Shown here in pieces: positions 37,105 through 47,101 of a stretch of DNA of 64,000 nucleotides. Within the stretch, counting starts at the first letter, position 1. Each line of letters starts with the position of its first letter. Under the pieces are notes generated by a model. It was not told where the DNA came from. It made no database searches and saw only the letters and a list, made by a program, of their open reading frames with translations. A program made the translations under genes and the position numbers. Location of the stretch: the sequence record NC_048048.2; one strand, 5' to 3'.

Positions 37105-38259
37105 ATGTCCATCTTCCCGCTGATCGAGCACATCGATCAGCTTCTCCCGGCCCTCGCGGGCCGGGAGGAGTTTGTTGTGGCCAAAAAGGACGGCTACACG
37201 GTCATCGACTACCGCTACGTCCTGGCCGACAGTTTCGACGAGCCGCTGCGCCGCGAGTGCCGGGGCATCAAGTTCGACGAGGAGGGCGTGATCATCGCCC
37301 GCCCGCTGCACAAGTTCTTCAACTGGGGCGAAAAGCCAGAGACGGGCTTGCAGCAGGTCGATTTCGCCAAGCCTCATGTCGTCATGGAGAAGATGGACGG
37401 ATCGATGATCCATCCGGCCTTCGTCAAGGACAAGCTGGTCTTCATGACCCGCATGGGCCGCACCGACGTGGCCCTGGAAGCCGAGAGGCTGTTCCTGGAA
37501 GGCAACGACTATCTTCGCCAGGGCCTGATCGAGAGCCTCGTCAGCGGCTTCACGCCGGTGTTCGAGTACATCGGCCCGGACAACCGCATCGTCGAGGCCT
37601 ACGACAAGCCCGAACTGGTGCTGCTTCAGGCGCGTGACATCGCCAACGGCGACTACCTCTCCCTGGACGCCTTGCAGGTCCTGTCCGTCGAATACGGCGT
37701 GCGCGTCGCCCCGACCTATCCGGCCTTCTCCAGGCACGAGGACGTCCTGGCCGTCCACAGCCGCGCCGAGGGCGGCGAAGGCGTGGTCCTGGTGTTCGAG
37801 GACGGCCTGTTCGTCAAGATCAAGACCGACGAGTACCGGCGCCTGCATCGGATCAAGGACGACGTCAGCCGCGAGCACGATCTGGCCCGCCTGATCCTCG
37901 ACGGCCAGATCGACGACGCCCTGCCGTTGTTCGACGAGCGCACCCGCGCCCAGGTCGAAGCCTTCGCCGGCACGCTGATGTCGGCCTATGCCGGCCTCGG
38001 CGATCGTGTCCAGATGCTGGTCACCGCCGGCCAGGACGTCGACCAGAAGACCTTCGCCACGGTGACCCTGAAGGATGCGCCCAACGGCGTGCGCTCGTGC
38101 GCCTTCAGCCTGCGCAAGGACCCCTCGATCGGCGCCGGCAAGGTGGTCCACGACTTCCTGATCGCCCACACCAAGGACGCCAAGGCGTTCGACTCGGTGC
38201 GCGACATGCTGGGCGGCGTGCGCTTCGAGGGCAAGGTCGCCCGCATGGAAGCCGGCTGA
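37105..38259 (+). CDS. RNA ligase 1 (T4 Rnl1-like)
   Basis: ECRGIKF, RPLHKFFN, EKMDGSMI, FEY, NRIV, EGVV, KIK motifs. Confidence 0.9.
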   Translation: MSIFPLIEHIDQLLPALAGREEFVVAKKDGYTVIDYRYVLADSFDEPLRRECRGIKFDEEGVIIARPLHKFFNWGEKPETGLQQVDFAKPHVVMEKMDGSMIHPAFVKDKLVFMTRMGRTDVALEAERLFLEGNDYLRQGLIESLVSGFTPVFEYIGPDNRIVEAYDKPELVLLQARDIANGDYLSLDALQVLSVEYGVRVAPTYPAFSRHEDVLAVHSRAEGGEGVVLVFEDGLFVKIKTDEYRRLHRIKDDVSREHDLARLILDGQIDDALPLFDERTRAQVEAFAGTLMSAYAGLGDRVQMLVTAGQDVDQKTFATVTLKDAPNGVRSCAFSLRKDPSIGAGKVVHDFLIAHTKDAKAFDSVRDMLGGVRFEGKVARMEAG

Positions 38260-38261
38260 CC

Positions 38262-38693
38262 ATGCTGATGGTCATCACGGGACCTCGGGTCAAGATCGCC
38301 CGCGCCTCGGTCCGCAATGTCCTGGACATCCTGTTCCCGGACCCCAGTCAGATCACCATGATCTCCGGCCGCGCCAAGGGCACGGATCAGTTTGGTGAGG
38401 ACTGGGCGCGCGATCGCGGCGCGGGCCTGATCCGCGTCCCGATCGACGACGCCTATGATGGCCACAACCCCTACACCGCGCCCAAGAACCGCAACCAGCG
38501 CATGGTCGATCTGAAGCCGCAATTGTGCGTCGGCTTCCCCGGCCACGGTGGCACCAACGACATGCTCGACCGCTGCCACAAGGCCGGCATGACCGTCTGG
38601 GAAGTCGAGTTCAAGGGCGGGGACTTCGAGGTTTGGCAATGGCCAAACGCCCGTGAACCTAAGGCCCGGCTGATCGCCGCCGGCGCCCACTGA
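38262..38693 (+). CDS. SLOG-family protein (YspA/DUF2493-like)
   Basis: ITG.R, SGRAKGTD, RNQRM, FPG..GT..M motifs. Confidence 0.7.
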   Translation: MLMVITGPRVKIARASVRNVLDILFPDPSQITMISGRAKGTDQFGEDWARDRGAGLIRVPIDDAYDGHNPYTAPKNRNQRMVDLKPQLCVGFPGHGGTNDMLDRCHKAGMTVWEVEFKGGDFEVWQWPNAREPKARLIAAGAH

Positions 38694-38709
38694 CCCCGAG
38701 AAACCATCC

Positions 38710-39894
38710 ATGACCACCGATACCCTCATCGTGGGGCCGCCGCTCTACAAGTACGACAGCAAGGGCAAGCTGCGCGTCTGGCGCATGGAGCAGGAAGGCT
38801 CCAAGCACCGCACCGTCGCCGGCCTCGACGGCGGCGCCCTGACCACCAGCGAGTGGACCCAGTGCGTGGGCAAGCAGAAACGCTCCGACGAGGAGCAGGC
38901 TGCCTTCGAGATCGCCTCGGGCTACGAGTACCAGTTGAAGCGCGAATATTTCGAGACGCCCGAGGCGGCGGCTGGCGAAGCGCGTTTCTTCAAGCCGATG
39001 CTGGCCCAGAAATGGAGCGATCTGGGCTGGGACGGCGCCCAAAAGCGCCTGAAGAAGTCCGGCTGGACCCCGCGCTTCGATGGCGACACCGGCGTCTACG
39101 CCCAGCCCAAGCTCGACGGCTTCTGCTGCATCGCCCAGAAGACCGGCCTGACCTCGCGCGAGGGCCAGCCGATCGTCGCCGTGCCTCACATCATGGAAGC
39201 CCTGGCCGGCTTCTTCGAGGAGTACCCGGACGCGGTCCTCCACGGCGAACTCTACAACCACGTCTTCAAGGACGATTTCGAAACCCTGGTCTCGATCCTG
39301 AAGAAGCAGAAGAACATCTCCGAGGAGCAATATGCCCTCGCTCGCGAGATGGCGCAGTTCCACCTCTACGACTACGCCGCCCCGCACGTGCGCGACGACC
39401 GCTACCCGGATCGCTACGAAGCCCTGGTCGCGCAGACCGCCGAACATGTCGAACTGGCCGACGGCATCCTGCACATCGTGCCGCTGGAGCCGATCACCAG
39501 CGCCGAGCACCTGGAGCAGCACCGCTCCAAGCAGGTCGACCTGGGCTACGAGGGCCAGATGCCCAAGCTTGATCTCTGCGGCTACGAGCAGAAGCGCTCC
39601 TGGAGCGTCCTGAAGAACAAGGTCTTCGACGACGGCGAGTTCGAGGTCGTCGACATCATCGAAGGCAAGGGCAACTACAGCGGCTACGCCAAGCGCGTCA
39701 CCTGCCGCCTGCCAGACGGCCGCACTTTCGGCGCCGGCATCAAGGGCGGCCAGTCGAAGTTCAACAAGGACCTGCTGGGCGAGGCCGGCCAGGAGCAGAA
39801 GGTGGTGACCATCACCCACTTCGGCTGGACCGGCGAAGGCATCCCCCGCATGGGCGTGGCCACCAAGTGGCACGGCGCCGAACGCACCCTCTAA
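38710..39894 (+). CDS. lig: ATP-dependent DNA ligase
   Basis: PMLA, QPKLDG, LHGELY, YD, YEG.M and LK.K motifs; C-terminal OB fold. Confidence 0.9.
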   Translation: MTTDTLIVGPPLYKYDSKGKLRVWRMEQEGSKHRTVAGLDGGALTTSEWTQCVGKQKRSDEEQAAFEIASGYEYQLKREYFETPEAAAGEARFFKPMLAQKWSDLGWDGAQKRLKKSGWTPRFDGDTGVYAQPKLDGFCCIAQKTGLTSREGQPIVAVPHIMEALAGFFEEYPDAVLHGELYNHVFKDDFETLVSILKKQKNISEEQYALAREMAQFHLYDYAAPHVRDDRYPDRYEALVAQTAEHVELADGILHIVPLEPITSAEHLEQHRSKQVDLGYEGQMPKLDLCGYEQKRSWSVLKNKVFDDGEFEVVDIIEGKGNYSGYAKRVTCRLPDGRTFGAGIKGGQSKFNKDLLGEAGQEQKVVTITHFGWTGEGIPRMGVATKWHGAERTL

Positions 39895-40925: not shown

Positions 40926-41513
40926 CTAGGCGAGGTTGCGGCGGATCAGGTCGGCATGTTGGAAAAGGTTCGGCGGTTCGGACTGGCTTCGGTCCTTCCA
41001 GGCGTTCGAGGTCGAGCCAACCTGGACCATGACGCCTTCTCCCCAACGCTCGGCCATGGCGAAGAGTTCACGGCCCAAATCCGTGGGATAGTAGCGGGCC
41101 GTGTAGCCCTGCCATCCAAGGTGGGTGGCCTTGGACCGCACGGCTTGGTTCTTGACCAGACTGGCGATCACCGACCGAACCTTCTCGGGCGGCAACTCGG
41201 CGATCGCGGCGATGTCGCTGATCGAGGCGCCAGGATCGACCTCGCCCTTGGTGCGGCGAATGAGGTTGGCGCGGATCAGGGCGCGGAAGACGGGCACGTG
41301 GGCGATCGTGACCTTGGCCACGCCCCAGGGCGCCCGGATCAGCAGGAACTCACGCCGGGCGCGGTCGCCGGCGGCCTGGACGCGCGCCATCCGTCCGCCG
41401 ATCGGTTCCTGGATCACCTCTTCGAGGCTTTTCGCAGGAACCCTGGCGCGGGCGGGACGATCGGTAACGACCTCGTGGGCGCCGTCGTCGAGAAGGTGTG
41501 CGTCGGTGTTCAT
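40926..41513 (-). CDS. winged-HTH-like protein
   Basis: SISDIAAIAELPPEKVRSVIASLVKNQAV wHTH pattern. Confidence 0.55.
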   Translation of the reverse strand: MNTDAHLLDDGAHEVVTDRPARARVPAKSLEEVIQEPIGGRMARVQAAGDRARREFLLIRAPWGVAKVTIAHVPVFRALIRANLIRRTKGEVDPGASISDIAAIAELPPEKVRSVIASLVKNQAVRSKATHLGWQGYTARYYPTDLGRELFAMAERWGEGVMVQVGSTSNAWKDRSQSEPPNLFQHADLIRRNLA

Positions 41514-41560
41514 GGCGCCCTTTTAGACGGCTTGCGGCAGGCTGTCAACAGATTTCTTGC

Positions 41561-41695
41561 TCAGGTCAACCAGATTATCAGGGGCGCTTTGCCCGGCCGA
41601 CGGACGACCTTGACGATCCCGGCGCTGATCAGGTCCGCATAGAAGACCTCGGGCGGCGGGATTTGGTGCTTGGGGTTCTTGCGGGGAGGCGGCAC
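41561..41695 (-). CDS. small hypothetical protein (44 aa, MPPPRKNPKHQIPPPEVF...)
   Basis: GTG start after an AT-rich promoter region; not in the ORF track. Confidence 0.4.
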   Translation of the reverse strand: MPPPRKNPKHQIPPPEVFYADLISAGIVKVVRRPGKAPLIIWLT

Positions 41696-41782
41696 GGAGG
41701 GCCTTTTATAAGCTATAAAGACAAAACCCTGGGATTGGTGAAAATCCCAGGGAAATCATAGGTTTGCTTATTTATAGACCTG

Positions 41783-42295
41783 CTAGGCTTGAAGCTTCAT
41801 CTGCTGGATGTGGAACTCATAGGAGCCCTTCAGACCCTGTCGGGTGACCTCGGCCATCTCCCTGGCCATGGCGTTTTCGGCCTCGGTCCGGTTGATGTAG
41901 ATCGAGTCGACCATGAGGCAGTCTTCGACGCGATCGTATTCGATCAGGGCGTAGACGACGCCATCCTCGGCGATGTCGCCGGAAATGTGGTTCTGATAAT
42001 AGTGGAACGAACTGTCGCGATCGGGGATGGCGTCCACGAACGACTCGGCCGCCTCGAACGAGCGGAATGGGTCATGGATCGTGATGGCCGGCTCATCGCC
42101 GCTGGCGACTTCGATGACCACCCAGCATGAGGTCTCGGTCCGCAGGATACGGTCGTAGGAGACCCGATGGCCCAGGCGATTTAGGATCATGTCGGCGACG
42201 ACCTCGGGGCCGCCGTTGCCCATGTAGCGAGGGCTGTCGGCGGCCTCCTCGTAGAGGATTTCGATGATCGCGTCGCGGGCTTCTTCACGAGTCAC
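41783..42295 (-). CDS. hypothetical protein
   Basis: Acidic, codon-biased ORF. Confidence 0.55.
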   Translation of the reverse strand: MTREEARDAIIEILYEEAADSPRYMGNGGPEVVADMILNRLGHRVSYDRILRTETSCWVVIEVASGDEPAITIHDPFRSFEAAESFVDAIPDRDSSFHYYQNHISGDIAEDGVVYALIEYDRVEDCLMVDSIYINRTEAENAMAREMAEVTRQGLKGSYEFHIQQMKLQA

Positions 42296-42488
42296 GAGGC
42301 ACCTCGTCGATGATGCGGGCCGCGCTGATCGCCAGATCGCAATAGGCCACGATCTTGCGCTGGCGGGCCGCGCTTGGGGTCGGGCCATCGGCGGCGGCGA
42401 TCGCCTCCACCTCGTCACGCGCATCGCGCAGCGCGTGACGAAGCTGGTTGATCACCGTCTCGTACTGGACGCTGGTCAGGACGGCCAA
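42285..42488 (-). CDS. hypothetical protein
   Basis: Coupled ORF. Confidence 0.55.
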   Translation of the reverse strand: MAVLTSVQYETVINQLRHALRDARDEVEAIAAADGPTPSAARQRKIVAYCDLAISAARIIDEVPRDS

Positions 42489-42490
42489 GG

Positions 42491-43216
42491 TCAGACTTCG
42501 CCGTTCAGGATCGCCACGAGGCGATCCAGACCGATGGCCACCTCGAAGCAGGTGAGCTTACGCGCGCCGTTGATCTCCGGGAAGTCGGTGCGTCGTGACG
42601 TCGAGGCCACTTCCTTCCAGTCGCCCTTCCAGCCCGTCTCGATGTCGATCGTCTCGGTGGCGTAGGCCGGCAGACGATCGCTGGGGATCAGGCGCGCCTG
42701 ATCGCCGACGATCAATTCGACCTCGCGCAGGACGCTTTCACGCACCGGCGTGGCGTAATCGGCCTTGGTGTCCTCGGCGTAGAGGCACTGGAACTCCAGT
42801 TGCCAGAACTGGTTGAAGCGTAGCTTCTCGGCCGTGGCGCCGTCGCTGCTCTCGCGGCGGAACGACGGACCGGCCTGCCAGACGCACAGCGGCGCCTTGA
42901 AGCCCGACTGACGCAGCAGGTGCTCGGCGATCTTGTAGGTGCCCGGCGTGGTCTCCGCGCGCAGCGCGAAAGGCTTGTCGCCCAGGACGCCGGCCAGTTC
43001 GAAGATGTCGCCGCCGTCGTAGGCGCACGAGAAGTCTTCTCGCGGCATCATCAGCGGCGTCTCGACGCGTTCGAAGCGCCAAGCCGAGTTGAGGTCGAGG
43101 AGGGGTCGCGAGACGGCCTCCAGGAGGCGGGCGATCATCTGGTCACGCAGCAGGATTTCCCGCTGCGTCCAGAAGCGCAGGCCACCACTTTGTCGGTTGT
43201 AAAGGGCGTAGCTCAT
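42491..43216 (-). CDS. stand-alone class II aaRS catalytic domain (GlyRS-1-like), no anticodon-binding domain
   Basis: Motif 1 FERVETPL, LRAETT, motif 2 GPSFRRE...RFNQFWQLEFQ, AYATETIDIE, RTDF, motif 3 EVAIGLDRL. Confidence 0.8.
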   Translation of the reverse strand: MSYALYNRQSGGLRFWTQREILLRDQMIARLLEAVSRPLLDLNSAWRFERVETPLMMPREDFSCAYDGGDIFELAGVLGDKPFALRAETTPGTYKIAEHLLRQSGFKAPLCVWQAGPSFRRESSDGATAEKLRFNQFWQLEFQCLYAEDTKADYATPVRESVLREVELIVGDQARLIPSDRLPAYATETIDIETGWKGDWKEVASTSRRTDFPEINGARKLTCFEVAIGLDRLVAILNGEV

Positions 43217-43248
43217 GGGGCTTTCATGTCATGATCCACGACACGCTG

Positions 43249-43554
43249 TCAACCACCCTTACTGAGAGCGGCCAGCGCGTCGTTCAGCTTCTTGTGGATG
43301 ATCGGCCGATCCTGGGCGTCGGTCAGGCGCTTGGGCATCCTCTGGGGCAGCCCCAGGTATTCGCGCCCGCGCCGGCGCAGTTCGGCCGGGTCGGTGATCT
43401 GGTCCTCGAAGAGAGCGCGCAGGAGTTTTCCGACGCCGATCATCTTGCCGATCAGGACTTCCTCGACGACCCGCTTGCTAGGCGGCTTGCGATTCTCGAA
43501 GGCCTGTAGATCGAGACACAGATCGACCCAGACTAAGTTGGCGGAGTCTCTCAC
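43249..43554 (-). CDS. hypothetical protein
   Basis: Start uncertain; overlaps the end of the upstream gene. Confidence 0.4.
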   Translation of the reverse strand: MRDSANLVWVDLCLDLQAFENRKPPSKRVVEEVLIGKMIGVGKLLRALFEDQITDPAELRRRGREYLGLPQRMPKRLTDAQDRPIIHKKLNDALAALSKGG

Positions 43555-43873
43555 GCGCTGATGGACGGTTTGGCTCCACCACTTTGGGGGCGGGGCGGAG
43601 GCTTCTTTGGATGAGGTCTTCATAGGCCTTGGCGCCAATCTCGATCTTGGTGTTGTCCATCCGGCGGTACTGCCGCTCGCAATAGCCCCAGACCATCGCC
43701 CAGTCGGCGTCTTCACGGGTAAAGCCCAGCACCCCCAGGGCAAGGTCAAGGTCGCCGACGGTGAAGTCCATCAGGCAGATGCGTTCCTCGGGGCAGGCTT
43801 CGTCGAAGCGCGCCAATTCGGCGTCGCGTTCGGAGACGTAGCGGCGTTCACGGGTGTTGAGGGAAGGACTCAT
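43478..43873 (-). CDS. hypothetical protein
   Basis: Follows a promoter motif. Confidence 0.55.
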   Translation of the reverse strand: MSPSLNTRERRYVSERDAELARFDEACPEERICLMDFTVGDLDLALGVLGFTREDADWAMVWGYCERQYRRMDNTKIEIGAKAYEDLIQRSLRPAPKVVEPNRPSARERLRQLSLGRSVSRSTGLRESQAA

Positions 43874-43983
43874 GGGTCGGAGCCTTCATGTCACGCCTCG
43901 TGACACGGGTCAAGATTTGCGCAATGGCACCAGCAACCAGACGATGCCCGTCAGGACCAGCGCCGCGAAGACAACGGCCTCCA

Positions 43984-44499
43984 TCACAGCGCTCCGGCGC
44001 AGGCCAGGGCCATCTTCCAGCCGCGCTCGGTCGGTTCGAAGCGGGCCACCGGCGAGATCAGCTTGGGGTCGTTCAGGAAGTGGGGATCGAGCCATCCCTT
44101 GTTCTTCTCGACGATGGCGTCCAGGCTGGAGGCCTGGAACACCAGGACCTTGCGGCCCTCGTAGTTCGTGCAACCTGGATAATCGATCTCCAGGACCAAG
44201 CCCCGGCCGTTCCGCTGCTCGCGAATCAGCTTCCACTTGACCGGATCGGGATCGCCGGGCGCCAGGGACATGGGCGACACCCCGCCCCGCGTCTTAGGCG
44301 CGCTGCCTGGAGACACCGAGCCTCGGATCGGCTCGGGCTCCCGATAGGAACTGCCGGGCGAGATCGACGACCTGACAGCGCGGGGCGCCCCGCCGATCGA
44401 GAAGGGCCGAGGACTAGCCTCGGTCTTTCCCGTCGACAGGATGCGTGGGCCGCTCGCCGCCCTGGGCGAGCGCCCCGAGGAGAACAGCCGCATGCCCAT
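43984..44499 (-). CDS. hypothetical protein (conserved C-terminal phage domain)
   Basis: YPGCTNYEGRKVLVF...DPHF...PVARF.PT..GW. Confidence 0.55.
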   Translation of the reverse strand: MGMRLFSSGRSPRAASGPRILSTGKTEASPRPFSIGGAPRAVRSSISPGSSYREPEPIRGSVSPGSAPKTRGGVSPMSLAPGDPDPVKWKLIREQRNGRGLVLEIDYPGCTNYEGRKVLVFQASSLDAIVEKNKGWLDPHFLNDPKLISPVARFEPTERGWKMALACAGAL

Positions 44500-45932
44500 C
44501 AGAATTGCGACGCGACCAGGGCGCGGATGTCGTCCAGGTAGTGGGCGTTGACGACGCGGCCGGTGTTGAAGCGCTCGACCAGGAGATCGTCGGGCCGAAC
44601 CTCGCCCGCGACGATGTTGACCGACTGATAGCCGGTCTCGGGGTTGTAGATCAGCGCGAACCGCCCGGCCTTGGAGGCCTTGCCAGGATCGGTGATCGGG
44701 TCCTTCATGATCGGCGTCTCGACGCCGTCGATCACGTGGTTGGAGGCCTTCATCGCCCAGCGGTTCTTGTCGCGATCCATGTCGGCCGTCGCCATGCCGC
44801 CGCCCGCCGCCGTCATGACGCTGTCGGGCGCGATGGCCAGGGATTCGGCGACCTCGAACGGCTGCATGTGCGTCTTCTCGTTCATGCCGTCGCCGGTCAG
44901 GACCTTGACGCCGTAGCGGATGACATCGCGGCCCTTGGAGTTGCGGTCGGTGCCGAACCCGCCGGCCAGGATGCGCAGGACCTCCGGGTTGACGTCGAAG
45001 ATTTCACCCGAGTCCGGCCGGCAGACCATGGTGATGTTCTTGTTGATGATCGCTTCCTTGCGGGTGACCAGCGTCTTGGAGAACTCGAAGATGTTCCAGG
45101 TGTCGCCGACCAGCGACAGGATGGAACCTTCGGGCACGCGCTCGATGGCGTTGTCGATGTAGTCGGCGTCGTTGTCGCGTCCGAAGCCGCACGAGATCGA
45201 GTGCTCCGACGCGATGACCGAATAGCCGGCCATCTCGTGATGGTAGTAGTAGTTGACGTGCCGGATCGCCGGATAGTTGTCCGAACCCATGAAATGGAAC
45301 AGATGGCCGATGCCGGCGAGGCACGAATGGTCGTAGCCCATTACCCCCCGCGAGGAGAAGTCCAGGAACGCGAACGGGCTCATCGGGTTGTCGCTGCGGT
45401 CGACCCACGAGGCGTTGATGCGCTGGGCGATGTAGAAGTTCCGCGTCGCGATCGAGCAGGCCGTCCACAGGTCGCGCAGGATCATCGTCTCGAAGTAGCT
45501 GGTCAGCCAGTAGAGGTCCGGGTCCAGGTTCTCGACGGTGAAGAGGACGTTCCTGACCGGCACCAGGGTGCCCTCGGCGACGGCCTTGATCCGCAGCGGC
45601 AGCCAGCCGTCGTAGACGTCGATGATCTTGCGCCAGCCGGCCTCGTTGAACGGCACGCCGTGCTTGGGAAGGTCACGCCGCAGTTCGGCGAGGTCTTCTT
45701 CGGTGACGCGCTGGCCCAGCTTGGCGTAAAGCAGCGGCTGGAGTCCGGCGAACATGATCGCCGGATAGTGGCCGCCACGGCTCTCGATGTAGCTGTAGAC
45801 GCTCGTCGTGCCCGTCCGGTAGATCAGGAAGTGGCTGAACTTGTAGCTGTCGGTGTCGGCCACGAGGTTGTACCGCAGCGGCGGCATGTGCTCGGGCAGG
45901 CGTTCCTTGATGCGCAAGGCGTGTCTCCTCAA
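44499..45932 (-). CDS. nadV: nicotinamide phosphoribosyltransferase (NAMPT/NadV)
   Basis: DTDSYKFSH, DFSSRG, SEHS, GDTWN, RPDSG, KDPITDPGKASK.GR motifs. Confidence 0.92.
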   Translation of the reverse strand: MRRHALRIKERLPEHMPPLRYNLVADTDSYKFSHFLIYRTGTTSVYSYIESRGGHYPAIMFAGLQPLLYAKLGQRVTEEDLAELRRDLPKHGVPFNEAGWRKIIDVYDGWLPLRIKAVAEGTLVPVRNVLFTVENLDPDLYWLTSYFETMILRDLWTACSIATRNFYIAQRINASWVDRSDNPMSPFAFLDFSSRGVMGYDHSCLAGIGHLFHFMGSDNYPAIRHVNYYYHHEMAGYSVIASEHSISCGFGRDNDADYIDNAIERVPEGSILSLVGDTWNIFEFSKTLVTRKEAIINKNITMVCRPDSGEIFDVNPEVLRILAGGFGTDRNSKGRDVIRYGVKVLTGDGMNEKTHMQPFEVAESLAIAPDSVMTAAGGGMATADMDRDKNRWAMKASNHVIDGVETPIMKDPITDPGKASKAGRFALIYNPETGYQSVNIVAGEVRPDDLLVERFNTGRVVNAHYLDDIRALVASQF

Positions 45933-47101
45933 AAGCTGGCGTAGCGGCCGATCATGTAGTCGGCGATGTGGGCGTGGTCCTCGAAGGTGTCGGTCGGATC
46001 GAGGTCGAAGGTGGGCATCCAGAAGGCGGACTTGGCGTCGTCGCTGCCGATCAGGCGCGGCAGGCCATAGCCCTTCGGGATTTGGAACAGGAACGCTTCG
46101 GTGATCAGGTGACCGCGCCGCGAGCGGTTGGGATCGTCAAACCGGTGGCCCTCGCCCTGGTGGAAGGACTTCAGCAGAGCGATCGCCTCGCGCAGGAAGC
46201 CGGGGTCTGTCGGCGCCTCGCGATTGGCGACGCGCGCCTCGTGGCACTCGCCCAGATAGGCCGTGAAGGCCGGCAGGTCGCGGTCTTCGATGAAGATGCC
46301 CGTCTCCTCGACCCCTTCGCGCGCGGCGCCGTCCAGCAACCGCTCGCCAGGGTTAAGGAAGCCGCCGGGCAGGCCCTTCATGCCAGTGCCCTCCTCGCCG
46401 CCGCGCTCGATCATCGCGATCTGGTCGCCGGCCAGGATCACCGGGTCGACGGTTTGGTGCGGACCTGGACCCCATTTCTCGCGATAGGCGATCTCGGCCG
46501 CCAGTTGCTTCATGAGGTAGGCATAGACCGGGCGGTCACGGAAGCGGCGCAGGAACTCGACGGTGGGGCGCGGCACAGTGCTCCAGTCAAAGCCGTCGTT
46601 CCACCCCTTGGCGTCGAAGTCGACGGCGCCGGTGAAATAGGCCTTGCGGATCGCCGTGGCGTTGGAGCCGGTGTCGGTGACCGCCACGTAGTCCCAGGCC
46701 CGGAACCACGTCAGATATTCGCTGGTGGCGTCGCGGATGTTGCCGACCAGGGCCACGCGCGGGCGCAGCGCCTTGGTCGAGCCCCGGACCGAGGCGTTGA
46801 CCGAGTCGATCCAGCCGGCCTTGTTGTAGGGCAGGTCGTTCAGCGGCGCGAAGGAGATGCGCTCCATGTCGCCGGCGCTGTAGCGTTCCCGCAGGCAGGC
46901 CTCCATCACATCACGACGCTCCTCGTAGGTGAACGGATTGCGCGTGTCTCGGGCGACATTGGCCGACCCGATCATGATGTGGACGCGGTCGGAGACATCC
47001 ATGGCCTTGTCGATCACCCGTCCGTGCCCCTCTTGGAAGCACTGGAAGCGGCCGATGACGCCGGCGACGTCGTAGAGAGCGGTCGAGCGGTACGAAGTCA
47101 T
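45929..47101 (-). CDS. nadM: bifunctional NMN adenylyltransferase / Nudix ADP-ribose pyrophosphatase (NadM-Nudix)
   Basis: IGRFQ.F..GH, IGSAN, RNPFTYEER, NATAIR; Nudix box GGF...GE...GAAREGVEETG. Confidence 0.9.
   Translation of the reverse strand: MTSYRSTALYDVAGVIGRFQCFQEGHGRVIDKAMDVSDRVHIMIGSANVARDTRNPFTYEERRDVMEACLRERYSAGDMERISFAPLNDLPYNKAGWIDSVNASVRGSTKALRPRVALVGNIRDATSEYLTWFRAWDYVAVTDTGSNATAIRKAYFTGAVDFDAKGWNDGFDWSTVPRPTVEFLRRFRDRPVYAYLMKQLAAEIAYREKWGPGPHQTVDPVILAGDQIAMIERGGEEGTGMKGLPGGFLNPGERLLDGAAREGVEETGIFIEDRDLPAFTAYLGECHEARVANREAPTDPGFLREAIALLKSFHQGEGHRFDDPNRSRRGHLITEAFLFQIPKGYGLPRLIGSDDAKSAFWMPTFDLDPTDTFEDHAHIADYMIGRYASF

What the first reader, a model, noticed from the sequence alone, without database searches (positions are those of the whole stretch)
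42491..43216. Stand-alone 241-aa GlyRS-1-like catalytic core under an early promoter
All three class II motifs and GlyRS-1-like segments (AYATETIDIE, EVASTSRRTDF) are present, but there are no insertion or anticodon-binding domains, and Caulobacter-type hosts use the unrelated alpha2beta2 GlyRS. Known aaRS paralogs ligate amino acids to proteins or carriers or make Ap4A. Here it could recharge phage tRNAs or tmRNA, aminoacylate a host protein, or modify nucleotides. The function appears undescribed.
Basis: partly seen in the sequence, partly recalled or inferred. Interest (0 to 1): 0.68.

Follow-up and report, generated by a model that had tools for sequence, protein, structure and literature searches.

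The report
Stand-alone minimal GlyRS catalytic core
A 241-residue protein of the giant Caulobacter phage CcrSC is a stripped-down glycyl-tRNA synthetase active site with no anticodon reader; it belongs to a large, uncharacterised family shared by giant phages and some soil bacteria, and it most likely loads glycine onto tRNA by reading the acceptor end only.

Summary
The ORF is real: window 42491-43216, minus strand, 241 aa, CcrSC gp229c, deposited as 'hypothetical'. It is a complete class II aaRS catalytic core of the alpha2 GlyRS type. All 13 mapped glycyl-adenylate contacts of M. tuberculosis GlyRS have counterparts that are invariant across the family: 12 are identical and Glu218 is Gln, including the Glu triad and the Ala that excludes larger amino acids. 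The insertion and anticodon-binding domains are absent. CcrSC encodes no separate anticodon domain, tRNA_bind domain or GlyS beta subunit. The 'early promoter' is not supported. The gene is not an oddity of this phage. About 219 clusters at 50% identity match at E<=1e-10. Nearly all full-length members among the best 150 are 210-260 aa and stand alone, in diverse jumbo phages. There is also a chromosomal clade in Rhizobium, Phenylobacterium and Devosia, which keep a canonical glyQ. No partner gene is conserved. Recurrent neighbours are tRNA arrays, genuine aaRS genes (ThrRS, CysRS), PTH2 and Rnl1 RNA ligase. Best reading (about 0.5): an anticodon-blind glycine:tRNA ligase. Rivals are glycine ligation to another acceptor, and Ap4A or other signalling chemistry. 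I found no published characterisation. Interest is moderate to high.

The parts
42491..43216 (-). CDS gp229c, 241 aa, 27.4 kDa, pI 5.1: stand-alone alpha2-type GlyRS catalytic core
   Evidence: ORF; 100% identical to the MH588547.2 annotation; family, PDB and fold matches; AF2 model with pLDDT 86.9
43166..43216 (-). Residues 1-17 (MSYALYNRQSGGLRFWT): conserved N-terminal loop, the probable counterpart of the GlyRS 'YxG loop' (dimer contact and acceptor-stem recognition). S2, R14 and W16 are invariant
   Evidence: Invariant columns. The model start aligns to Mtb residue 17. The loop's role is taken from PMC12208437. The residue-to-residue match is inferred, and residues 1-11 have low pLDDT
43043..43078 (-). 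Residues 47-58: motif 1 strand and invariant P58
   Evidence: Alignment A1; secondary structure E47-50 and E56-58
42947..42961 (-). Residues 86-90, RAETT: counterpart of GlyRS RPETAQG. E88 corresponds to Mtb Glu165, the first Glu of the glycine-binding triad
   Evidence: HMMER alignments to 8u2q and 8t5n; residue roles from PMC12208437; invariant in A1 and A2
42788..42871 (-). Residues 116-143: motif 2 and the ATP loop. R120=Arg197, E122=Glu199, F137=Phe212, Q139=Gln214, E141=Glu216, Q143=Glu218. The loop carries a family-specific invariant D125-G126-A127
   Evidence: the loop has low pLDDT (52), as expected for a flexible motif 2 loop
42638..42676 (-). Residues 181-193, RLPAYATETIDIE: counterpart of the GlyRS lid '[AS]HY[AS]' motif. 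Y185 corresponds to Mtb Tyr264
42581..42613 (-). Residues 202-212, EVASTSRRTDF: E202 corresponds to Mtb Glu284 (ribose and metal ligand) and R209 to Arg291
42506..42544 (-). Residues 225-237, EVAIGLDRLVAIL: motif 3. E225=Glu324 (third Glu of the triad), A227=Ala326 (blocks a side chain, so glycine-specific), R232=Arg331 (stacks on adenine)
   Evidence: The spacing E+2=A and E+7=R is identical to Mtb 324/326/331; the pairing is by motif and spacing only, because the printed residue alignments to the mycobacterial chains end before this segment; invariant in A1 and A2
43247..43252 (-). TTGACA hexamer overlapping the stop codon of gp230c. This is the only promoter-like element upstream; there is no -10 match
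41727..41752 (-). Intrinsic-terminator-like hairpin (10 bp stem plus a T run) after gp227c: the probable end of the transcription unit gp229c-gp228c-gp227c
   Evidence: gene spacing of a 2-nt gap and then an 11-nt overlap
41783..42488 (-). Two downstream ORFs, gp228c (67 aa, 42285-42488) and gp227c (170 aa, 41783-42295). They are tightly packed behind the target, have no Pfam family, and were not found next to homologs outside the close relatives

Best explanation
gp229c is a minimalist enzyme descended from the alpha2-type glycyl-tRNA synthetase. It keeps the whole class II catalytic core and has lost the insertion domain, the beta-hairpin linker and the anticodon-binding domain. Step 1 (strongly inferred): it binds ATP and glycine and makes glycyl-adenylate exactly as GlyRS does. 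Step 2 (inferred, about even odds): it transfers glycine to the 3' terminal adenosine of tRNA(Gly). Recognition would use only the acceptor end (G1-C72, C2-G71, U73), through the retained motif 2 loop and N-terminal YxG-type loop, so the enzyme would be blind to the anticodon. It probably works as a homodimer, like other class II cores; this was not tested. Biological role (speculative): an auxiliary supply of Gly-tRNA that does not depend on the host's unrelated alpha2beta2 GlyRS, as part of the translation and tRNA-rescue toolkit of jumbo phages (tRNAs, aaRSs, PTH2, RNA ligase). The same enzyme has been captured as a stand-alone accessory gene by some Alphaproteobacteria.
Against: No biochemical data exist. 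In canonical alpha2 GlyRS the missing parts matter: the insertion-domain stem supplies the Phe that stacks on A76 (PMC12208437), and C35/C36 in the anticodon are identity elements (PMC9976931). Both the host and the paralog-bearing bacteria already have a working GlyRS, and the phage tRNA-Gly has an ordinary identity set, so no need for a dedicated enzyme is evident. The protein is acidic (pI 5.1; family median 5.4). Proximity to tRNA genes (14 of 32 loci within 10 kb) is not clearly above what tRNA-rich jumbo genomes give by chance; by my estimate about 36% of the CcrSC genome lies within 10 kb of a tRNA. PTH2 is common in jumbo phages in any case (PMC7824862). Scores are far below the curated GlyRS cut-offs (37 against 312 bits).
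Confidence: 0.5

Rival explanations
1. Glycine ligase for a non-tRNA acceptor. The core makes glycyl-adenylate and hands glycine to a protein side chain, a carrier-protein thiol, a small-molecule amine or a nucleic-acid base. Precedents are the other truncated aaRS paralogues: aa:carrier-protein ligases, AsnA, PoxA/EpmA and MshC.
For: Loss of both tRNA-binding appendages is the usual signature of aaRS paralogues that changed acceptor (table in PMC9437257). The family-specific invariant D125-G126-A127 in the motif 2 loop, and R175/R181, have no assigned role. The protein is acidic. The gene is an accessory one in bacteria that already have a GlyRS.
Against: No carrier protein, transferase or biosynthetic gene is conserved next to it in phages or bacteria. 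At E<=0.01 the PDB sequence searches list only tRNA ligases (GlyRS, SerRS, PylRS), and no ligase with another acceptor. No Mom-type Gly-tRNA-dependent DNA modifier occurs in 5 phage genomes. The acceptor-stem recognition loops are conserved.
Confidence: 0.25
2. Nucleotide-signal or alarmone enzyme. The core is used mainly to make Ap4A or related dinucleoside polyphosphates, or glycyl-AMP itself, to manipulate host stress or defence signalling.
For: Among the structural matches is human GlyRS crystallised with Ap4A (2zt5). From general knowledge, alpha2 GlyRS can make Ap4A. NAD-salvage and Nudix genes lie nearby in CcrSC and XbC2, and a Nudix gene is near the Brevundimonas phage homolog.
Against: The complete glycine pocket, including the specificity-determining Ala, is invariant, which would not be needed for ATP-only chemistry. 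The Nudix and NAD neighbours are not conserved across loci.
Confidence: 0.1
3. Non-catalytic aaRS-like subunit: a regulator or scaffold like HisZ or the DNA polymerase gamma accessory subunit.
Against: All 13 mapped catalytic residues have counterparts that are invariant over a family diverged to below 40% identity, which is the opposite of the decay seen in pseudo-enzymes. No HisG or polymerase partner is nearby.
Confidence: 0.03

Closest known systems
Bacterial alpha2-type glycyl-tRNA synthetase (e.g. M. tuberculosis / M. thermoresistibile GlyRS, PDB 8U2P, 8SLG; T. thermophilus 1ATI)
   Different: About half the size (241 against 463 aa). There is no insertion domain, no beta-hairpin linker and no HGTP anticodon-binding domain. 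The segment between RTDF and motif 3 is shortened, and in the CcrSC subfamily the motif 2 loop is 2 residues longer with an invariant DGA. Identity is about 20%, and scores are far below the curated family cut-offs.
Amino acid:[carrier protein] ligases (truncated SerRS homologues of Bradyrhizobium/Agrobacterium; Mocibob 2010, cited in PMC9437257)
   Same: They are stand-alone class II cores without a tRNA-binding domain, they occur in Alphaproteobacteria, and some activate glycine.
   Different: They derive from methanogen-type SerRS, not GlyRS. They are encoded next to their carrier protein. At E<=0.01 the PDB sequence searches list only tRNA ligases and no such entry, and no carrier protein is adjacent here.
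GlyCA 'urzymes' and the alpha subunit of heterotetrameric GlyRS-B (PMC11602164)
   Same: They are minimal glycine-activating class II catalysts lacking an anticodon domain, and they are reported to glycylate tRNA(Gly) weakly.
   Different: They belong to the unrelated GlyRS-B lineage, and glyQ models do not hit gp229c. GlyCA is a fragment found in a database record and not a conserved natural family, whereas this family is under strong purifying selection in hundreds of genomes.
N-terminal-domain-less pyrrolysyl-tRNA synthetases (about 270-aa class II enzymes, e.g. M. alvus PylRS 6JP2)
   Same: They are complete synthetases consisting of little more than the class II core, and they do not read the anticodon. 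There is weak sequence similarity (E 2e-4) and fold similarity.
   Different: They use a different amino-acid pocket and a dedicated tRNA(Pyl). They are a functional analogy only, not the nearest relatives.
HisZ and DNA polymerase gamma accessory subunit (non-catalytic class IIa paralogues)
   Same: They share the class IIa core fold without canonical tRNA charging.
   Different: Those have lost their catalytic residues and depend on a partner enzyme. Here all 13 mapped catalytic residues have invariant counterparts, and no partner is conserved.

Membership tests
alpha2-type (class IIa) glycyl-tRNA synthetase | Class II catalytic fold with motifs 1, 2 and 3 | tested here: met
alpha2-type (class IIa) glycyl-tRNA synthetase | Glycine pocket: three glutamates plus a small residue (Ala/Ser) that excludes side chains | tested here: met
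   E88, E141, E225 and A227 correspond to Mtb Glu165, Glu216, Glu324 and Ala326; E225 and A227 are placed by motif 3 spacing. All are invariant.
alpha2-type (class IIa) glycyl-tRNA synthetase | ATP/adenylate contacts (motif 2 Arg and Glu, Phe, Gln, ribose Glu, motif 3 Arg, lid Tyr) | tested here: met
   R120, E122, F137, Q139, E202, R232 and Y185 correspond to Arg197, Glu199, Phe212, Gln214, Glu284, Arg331 and Tyr264; R232 is placed by motif 3 spacing.
alpha2-type (class IIa) glycyl-tRNA synthetase | Score above the curated family cut-off (NF003211 312 bits; TIGR00389 243 bits) | tested here: not met
   37.2 and 20.2 bits. The best E-value in the family is 8.6e-17, and every member matches only as a partial domain.
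alpha2-type (class IIa) glycyl-tRNA synthetase | Insertion domain after the first core strand (positions A76 and the acceptor arm) | tested here: not met
   About 20 residues (59-80) replace Mtb 88-143. Only rare ~330-aa family members carry an insertion there.
alpha2-type (class IIa) glycyl-tRNA synthetase | C-terminal HGTP anticodon-binding domain (reads C35, C36) | tested here: not met
   The protein ends 9 residues after motif 3. There is no PF03129 hit in the protein or in any frame of the 317-kb genome.
alpha2-type (class IIa) glycyl-tRNA synthetase | Homodimer | not tested
alpha2-type (class IIa) glycyl-tRNA synthetase | Glycylation of tRNA(Gly) | not testable with these tools
   This needs an aminoacylation assay.
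amino acid:[carrier protein] ligase (SerRS-like) | Sequence kinship with methanogen-type SerRS / aa:CP ligase, and an adjacent carrier-protein gene | tested here: not met
   At E<=0.01 the PDB sequence searches list only tRNA ligases (GlyRS, SerRS, PylRS). The neighbours gp227c, gp228c and gp230c have no Pfam family, and the bacterial neighbours are unrelated housekeeping genes.
HisZ (ATP-PRT regulatory subunit) | HisRS-like core with degenerate catalytic residues, working with HisG | tested here: not met
   HisZ models are weaker than GlyRS models (2.8e-5 against 1.5e-9) and hit only 14 of 32 members. The catalytic residues are intact.
GlyRS-B alpha subunit (glyQ) | Match to the glyQ model TIGR00388 | tested here: not met
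   TIGR00388 is not among the NCBIfam hits at E<=1. The genuine glyQ genes of the paralog-bearing bacteria lie elsewhere in their genomes.

The most novel reading that the evidence does not exclude
The family is a natural anticodon-blind glycyl ligase whose purpose is not routine translation. One possibility is that it re-glycylates tRNAs independently of their anticodon, for example suppressor or otherwise altered phage tRNAs; CUA-anticodon tRNAs lie within 2.5 kb of the homolog in two unrelated huge phages. A second possibility is that it restores Gly-tRNA(Gly) together with PTH2 after attack by Gly-tRNA-specific toxins of the TacT type. A third is that it glycylates an acceptor of a kind not yet known. 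Any of these would make it a new functional class of aaRS paralogue shared by giant phages and soil bacteria.
Probability: 0.2. Interest if true: 0.8.

Novelty: new variant of a known kind. Interest (0 to 1): 0.6.

Why it matters
If it charges tRNA, this would be a naturally evolved and widely conserved class II synthetase reduced to its catalytic core. [quoted passage not shown] It would also be a compact, anticodon-independent glycylation tool for synthetic biology. For phage biology it adds a recurrent component to the translation and tRNA-rescue toolkit of jumbo phages, and it raises the question of why glycine in particular is provided. Two known facts make that question concrete: host toxins that target Gly-tRNA(Gly), and a huge-phage CRISPR spacer that targets the host GlyRS gene (PMC7162821). 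If it uses another acceptor, it defines a new aaRS-derived ligase. In either case more than a thousand database proteins now labelled 'aminoacyl--tRNA ligase-related' or 'hypothetical' would gain a testable function.

Tried and rejected
1. Split GlyRS with a separate anticodon domain: there is no PF03129 anywhere in CcrSC. In two other phages the only PF03129 hits are in long ORFs (500 and 665 aa), of which the G001 one is a full-length ThrRS.
2. Trans-acting tRNA-binding module (PF01588) or GlyS beta subunit (PF02092): absent in 5 phage genomes.
3. Supplying Gly-tRNA to a Mom-like DNA hypermodifier (PMC13219725): there is no Mom homolog by protein search or by PF25680 in 5 phage genomes.
4. 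A phage tRNA-Gly with unusual identity that would need its own enzyme: the phage tRNA-Gly genes have standard G1-C72, C2-G71, G3-C70 and U73.
5. A conserved partner gene: none was found across 34 phage-type loci or 22 bacterial loci. The antisense 'clusters' are shadow ORFs.
6. Bacterial copies being prophage-borne or in a biosynthetic cluster: the neighbours are Mla transport, GGDEF, a DD-carboxypeptidase, isochorismatase, acyl-CoA dehydrogenase and thiolase genes.
7. A glycine riboswitch, T-box or other Rfam element upstream: none.
8. Extra glycine demand from the neighbouring 'PE-PGRS' protein: it is only 6.6% Gly.
9. A sigma-70 promoter: none was found.
Profile and structure rankings were used instead.
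13. Seven literature searches found no description of this family.

Full report
What is there. The window is part of Caulobacter phage CcrSC (MH588547.2, 317,489 bp, Bertelyvirus); it covers genome positions 124001-188000. At 42491-43216 on the minus strand there is an ATG-initiated ORF of 241 aa. It is identical to CcrSC_gp229c, which is deposited as 'hypothetical protein'. GC (65.4%) and GC3 (86%) are typical of the genome. The gene lies in a long co-directional array. It starts 32 bp after gp230c and is followed, after a 2-nt gap and then an 11-nt overlap, by two small unknown ORFs. A strong terminator-like hairpin follows at 41727-41752.

The promoter claim. The consensus scan finds no sigma-70-type promoter in 41500-45000. 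The only promoter-like element is a TTGACA hexamer that overlaps the stop codon of gp230c, and it has no acceptable -10 element. 'Early' expression cannot be inferred from the sequence. The only sequencing runs that hold any of the region are wastewater metatranscriptomes with small shares.

Active site. PMC12208437 lists the contacts of glycyl-AMS in MtbGlyRS. Ten of the 13 contacts can be read from the HMMER residue alignments (chain numbering is offset by 13, which I checked on six residues); these alignments end near residue 221. The three motif 3 contacts (E225, A227, R232) are placed by motif and spacing (E+2=A, E+7=R, as in Mtb 324/326/331). The map is as follows:
- Glu165/Glu216/Glu324, which hold the glycine amino group, correspond to E88, E141 and E225.
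- Ala326, which blocks any side chain and so gives glycine specificity, corresponds to A227.
- Arg197 corresponds to R120, Glu199 to E122, Phe212 to F137 and Gln214 to Q139.
- Tyr264 of the lid corresponds to Y185.
- Glu284, the ribose and metal ligand, corresponds to E202.
- Arg291 corresponds to R209 and Arg331 to R232.
- The buried, protonated Glu218 corresponds to Q143, a chemically equivalent residue.
All of these are invariant in the 32-sequence alignment. They remain invariant in a second alignment that spans both subfamilies and the bacterial members at 34-43% identity. Formation of glycyl-adenylate is therefore a strong inference.

What is missing. Compared with the 463-aa Mtb enzyme, three parts are reduced or absent. 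The insertion domain (residues 88-143) is reduced to a short hairpin. The stretch between the RTDF motif and motif 3 is shortened. The beta-hairpin linker and the HGTP anticodon-binding domain are gone. A six-frame search of the whole phage genome finds no HGTP anticodon domain. Five phage genomes that carry the family have no tRNA_bind domain and no GlyS beta subunit. Caulobacter vibrioides does use the glyQ/glyS type (controls).

The family. The gene is not a singleton.
- tblastn finds it in all Bertelyvirus-type Caulobacter phages (84-100% identity) and in the 350-kb Brevundimonas phages (55-58%).
- It is also found in Sinorhizobium phage Phosso (469 kb), Xanthomonas phage XbC2 (368 kb) and two uncultured phages of about 635 kb.
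- The word-indexed search gives 483 proteins, almost all 235-260 aa, several of them on contigs of 400-590 kb.
- An exhaustive profile search of 1.84 billion cluster representatives gives 219 clusters at E<=1e-10 and 106 at E<=1e-30. Among the 150 best listed, nearly all full-length members are 210-260 aa, and none carries an added C-terminal domain.
- Five representatives of about 330 aa carry a 70-90-residue insertion at exactly the position of the GlyRS insertion domain.

Cellular members. A scan of one genome per prokaryotic species found 110 hits. They include many Rhizobium species (some on complete chromosomes), Phenylobacterium, Devosia, Labrys, Shinella, Pseudaminobacter and a Caulobacter species, at 41-47% identity to the phage protein. 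RefSeq calls these 'aminoacyl--tRNA ligase-related protein', and 1725 proteins match the Rhizobium member at E<=1e-10. In these bacteria the gene stands alone among unrelated housekeeping genes and not in a prophage. The same genomes keep a canonical glyQ.

Phylogeny. A maximum-likelihood tree separates two groups. One is a shallow bacterial clade of 15 rows, with Phosso and XbC2 as its nearest outgroups (support 100/100). The other is a much more diverse, phage-dominated clade that contains CcrSC. Three 'bacterial' rows inside the phage clade come from MAG or scaffold contigs and may be phage DNA. The tree is unrooted, so the direction of transfer is not shown. The far greater phage diversity is consistent with a phage-borne family that bacteria captured.

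Context. No neighbour is conserved across 34 phage-type loci. The neighbours that do recur are translation or RNA-repair genes:
- tRNA genes lie within 10 kb in 14 of 32 loci. A tRNA-Gly(CCC) ends 19 bp before the gene in L007 and L014, a tRNA-Ser lies 20 bp before it in XbC2, and the gene sits inside tRNA arrays in L008 and L028.
- An Rnl1-type RNA ligase occurs in 4 loci, including the window (37105-38259).
- PTH2 occurs in 3 loci, a metallophosphatase in 5 and a YAcAr/SLOG protein in 5.
- In Phosso the gene lies two genes from a CysRS and next to a tRNA.
- In a 607-kb phage it lies 450 bp behind a full-length ThrRS.
- PTH2 is present in all five phage genomes tested.
These associations are suggestive only. 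Jumbo phages are rich in such genes. By my estimate about a third of the CcrSC genome lies within 10 kb of a tRNA.

Mechanism. Step 1, glycine activation, rests on the residue map above. Step 2, the acceptor, is inferred. Four points favour tRNA.
1. PMC12208437 identifies the ATP (motif 2) loop and the N-terminal YxG loop as the tRNA acceptor-stem recognition loops that become ordered when the adenylate binds. Both loops are retained here and carry invariant residues: R14 and W16 are probable counterparts of Arg29 and Trp32, and D125-G126-A127 lies in the motif 2 loop.
2. The lack of any co-encoded partner, in phages and in bacteria, points to a universal acceptor.
3. The gene keeps company with tRNA and aaRS genes.
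4. There is precedent. PylRS catalytic domains of about 270 aa are complete, anticodon-independent synthetases, and minimal GlyRS-B fragments glycylate tRNA(Gly) (PMC11602164).
Four points count against tRNA.
1. The canonical enzyme uses the insertion-domain stem to stack on A76 and reads C35/C36 (PMC9976931).
2. The protein is acidic.
3. The phage tRNA-Gly is ordinary.
4. The hosts already have a GlyRS.
I put an anticodon-blind Gly:tRNA ligase at about 0.5, another acceptor at about 0.25, Ap4A or signalling chemistry at about 0.1, and a non-catalytic role at about 0.03.

Ideas tested and dropped. Gly-tRNA(Gly) was recently shown to be the glycine donor for the Mom DNA hypermodification (PMC13219725). 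However, no Mom homolog exists in five phage genomes that carry the family. No riboswitch or T-box precedes the bacterial or phage genes. The neighbouring 'PE-PGRS' protein is not glycine-rich.

Possible biological role (speculative). Glycine is singled out by known conflict systems. The TacT toxin acetylates Gly-tRNA(Gly) specifically (PMC9976931); that peptidyl-tRNA hydrolases reverse such damage is from general knowledge. A huge-phage CRISPR spacer targets the host GlyRS gene (PMC7162821). A small GlyRS that is independent of the host enzyme, combined with phage PTH2 and tRNAs, would fit a strategy of keeping translation running. In addition, CUA-anticodon tRNAs lie within 2.5 kb of the homolog in Phosso and L025. 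An anticodon-blind enzyme could in principle charge such tRNAs. CcrSC itself has no suppressor tRNA.

Novelty. Seven full-text searches and targeted reading of the jumbo-phage, huge-phage and aaRS-paralogue literature found no description of this family. Databases label it generically. It is best classed as a new variant of a known kind: a naturally minimised GlyRS-A core whose acceptor is not yet established. The earlier scan notes for this genome concern other features and did not affect this reading.

Noticed in passing
window 44499-47101 (-): Nicotinamide phosphoribosyltransferase (44499-45932) and NadM-type NMN adenylyltransferase fused to a Nudix ADP-ribose pyrophosphatase (45929-47101) overlap by 4 nt, 1.3 kb upstream of the target. 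This is a two-gene NAD+ salvage unit of the kind phages use against NAD-depleting defences. XbC2 has NadR and PnuC near its homolog.
   Followed up: no
window 37105-39894 (+): An RNA-repair-like module: an Rnl1-type RNA ligase (37105-38259), a YAcAr/SLOG protein (38262-38693) and an ATP-dependent ligase-like protein (38710-39894). Rnl1 and YAcAr homologs recur within 10 kb of the GlyRS-like gene in other phages.
   Followed up: partly
L003:4573-4648 (Phosso) and L025:12439-12514 (-): CUA-anticodon (amber suppressor-type) tRNAs lie within 2.5 kb of the GlyRS-like gene in two unrelated huge phages, each with a PTH2 gene nearby. The L025 tRNA has a Gly-like acceptor stem (G1-C72, C2-G71, G3-C70) with A73.
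   Followed up: partly
L014:9907-9982 and L007:1554-1629: A tRNA-Gly(CCC) ends 19 bp before the start of the GlyRS-like gene, at the end of a 14-tRNA array, which suggests co-transcription.
   Followed up: no
L013:8084-9550 (+): A 607-kb phage encodes a 488-aa ThrRS (TIGR00418, 478 bits) that lacks the N-terminal editing region. It lies 450 bp upstream of the GlyRS-like gene.
   Followed up: partly
proteins P0143, P0148, P0161, P0169, P0189: Family variants of about 330 aa carry a 70-90-residue, poorly conserved insertion at exactly the site of the GlyRS insertion domain. They may be evolutionary intermediates or re-acquired acceptor-arm modules.
   Followed up: partly
L036-L115 (e.g. L070:7992-8741, Rhizobium binxianense chromosome): There is a chromosomal, stand-alone clade of the same family in Rhizobium, Phenylobacterium, Devosia, Labrys and Shinella, alongside a canonical glyQ. 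Placements such as Labrys inside the Rhizobium group and Devosia inside the Phenylobacterium group suggest horizontal spread.
   Followed up: partly
genome G000 positions 235407-235661 and 244353-244694: CcrSC carries two PTH2-type (archaeal/eukaryotic-type) peptidyl-tRNA hydrolase genes. PTH2 was found in all five phage genomes examined that carry the GlyRS-like gene.
   Followed up: no
window 43247-43252 (-): A perfect TTGACA overlaps the stop codon of gp230c, 31 nt before the ATG of gp229c. No Shine-Dalgarno-like sequence is evident in between. If it were a real -35 element, the transcript would be nearly leaderless.
   Followed up: partly
L052:10389-10552 (-): A 6S RNA gene lies about 1.6 kb downstream of the Caulobacter sp. 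KR2-114 homolog. This is probably coincidental.
   Followed up: no
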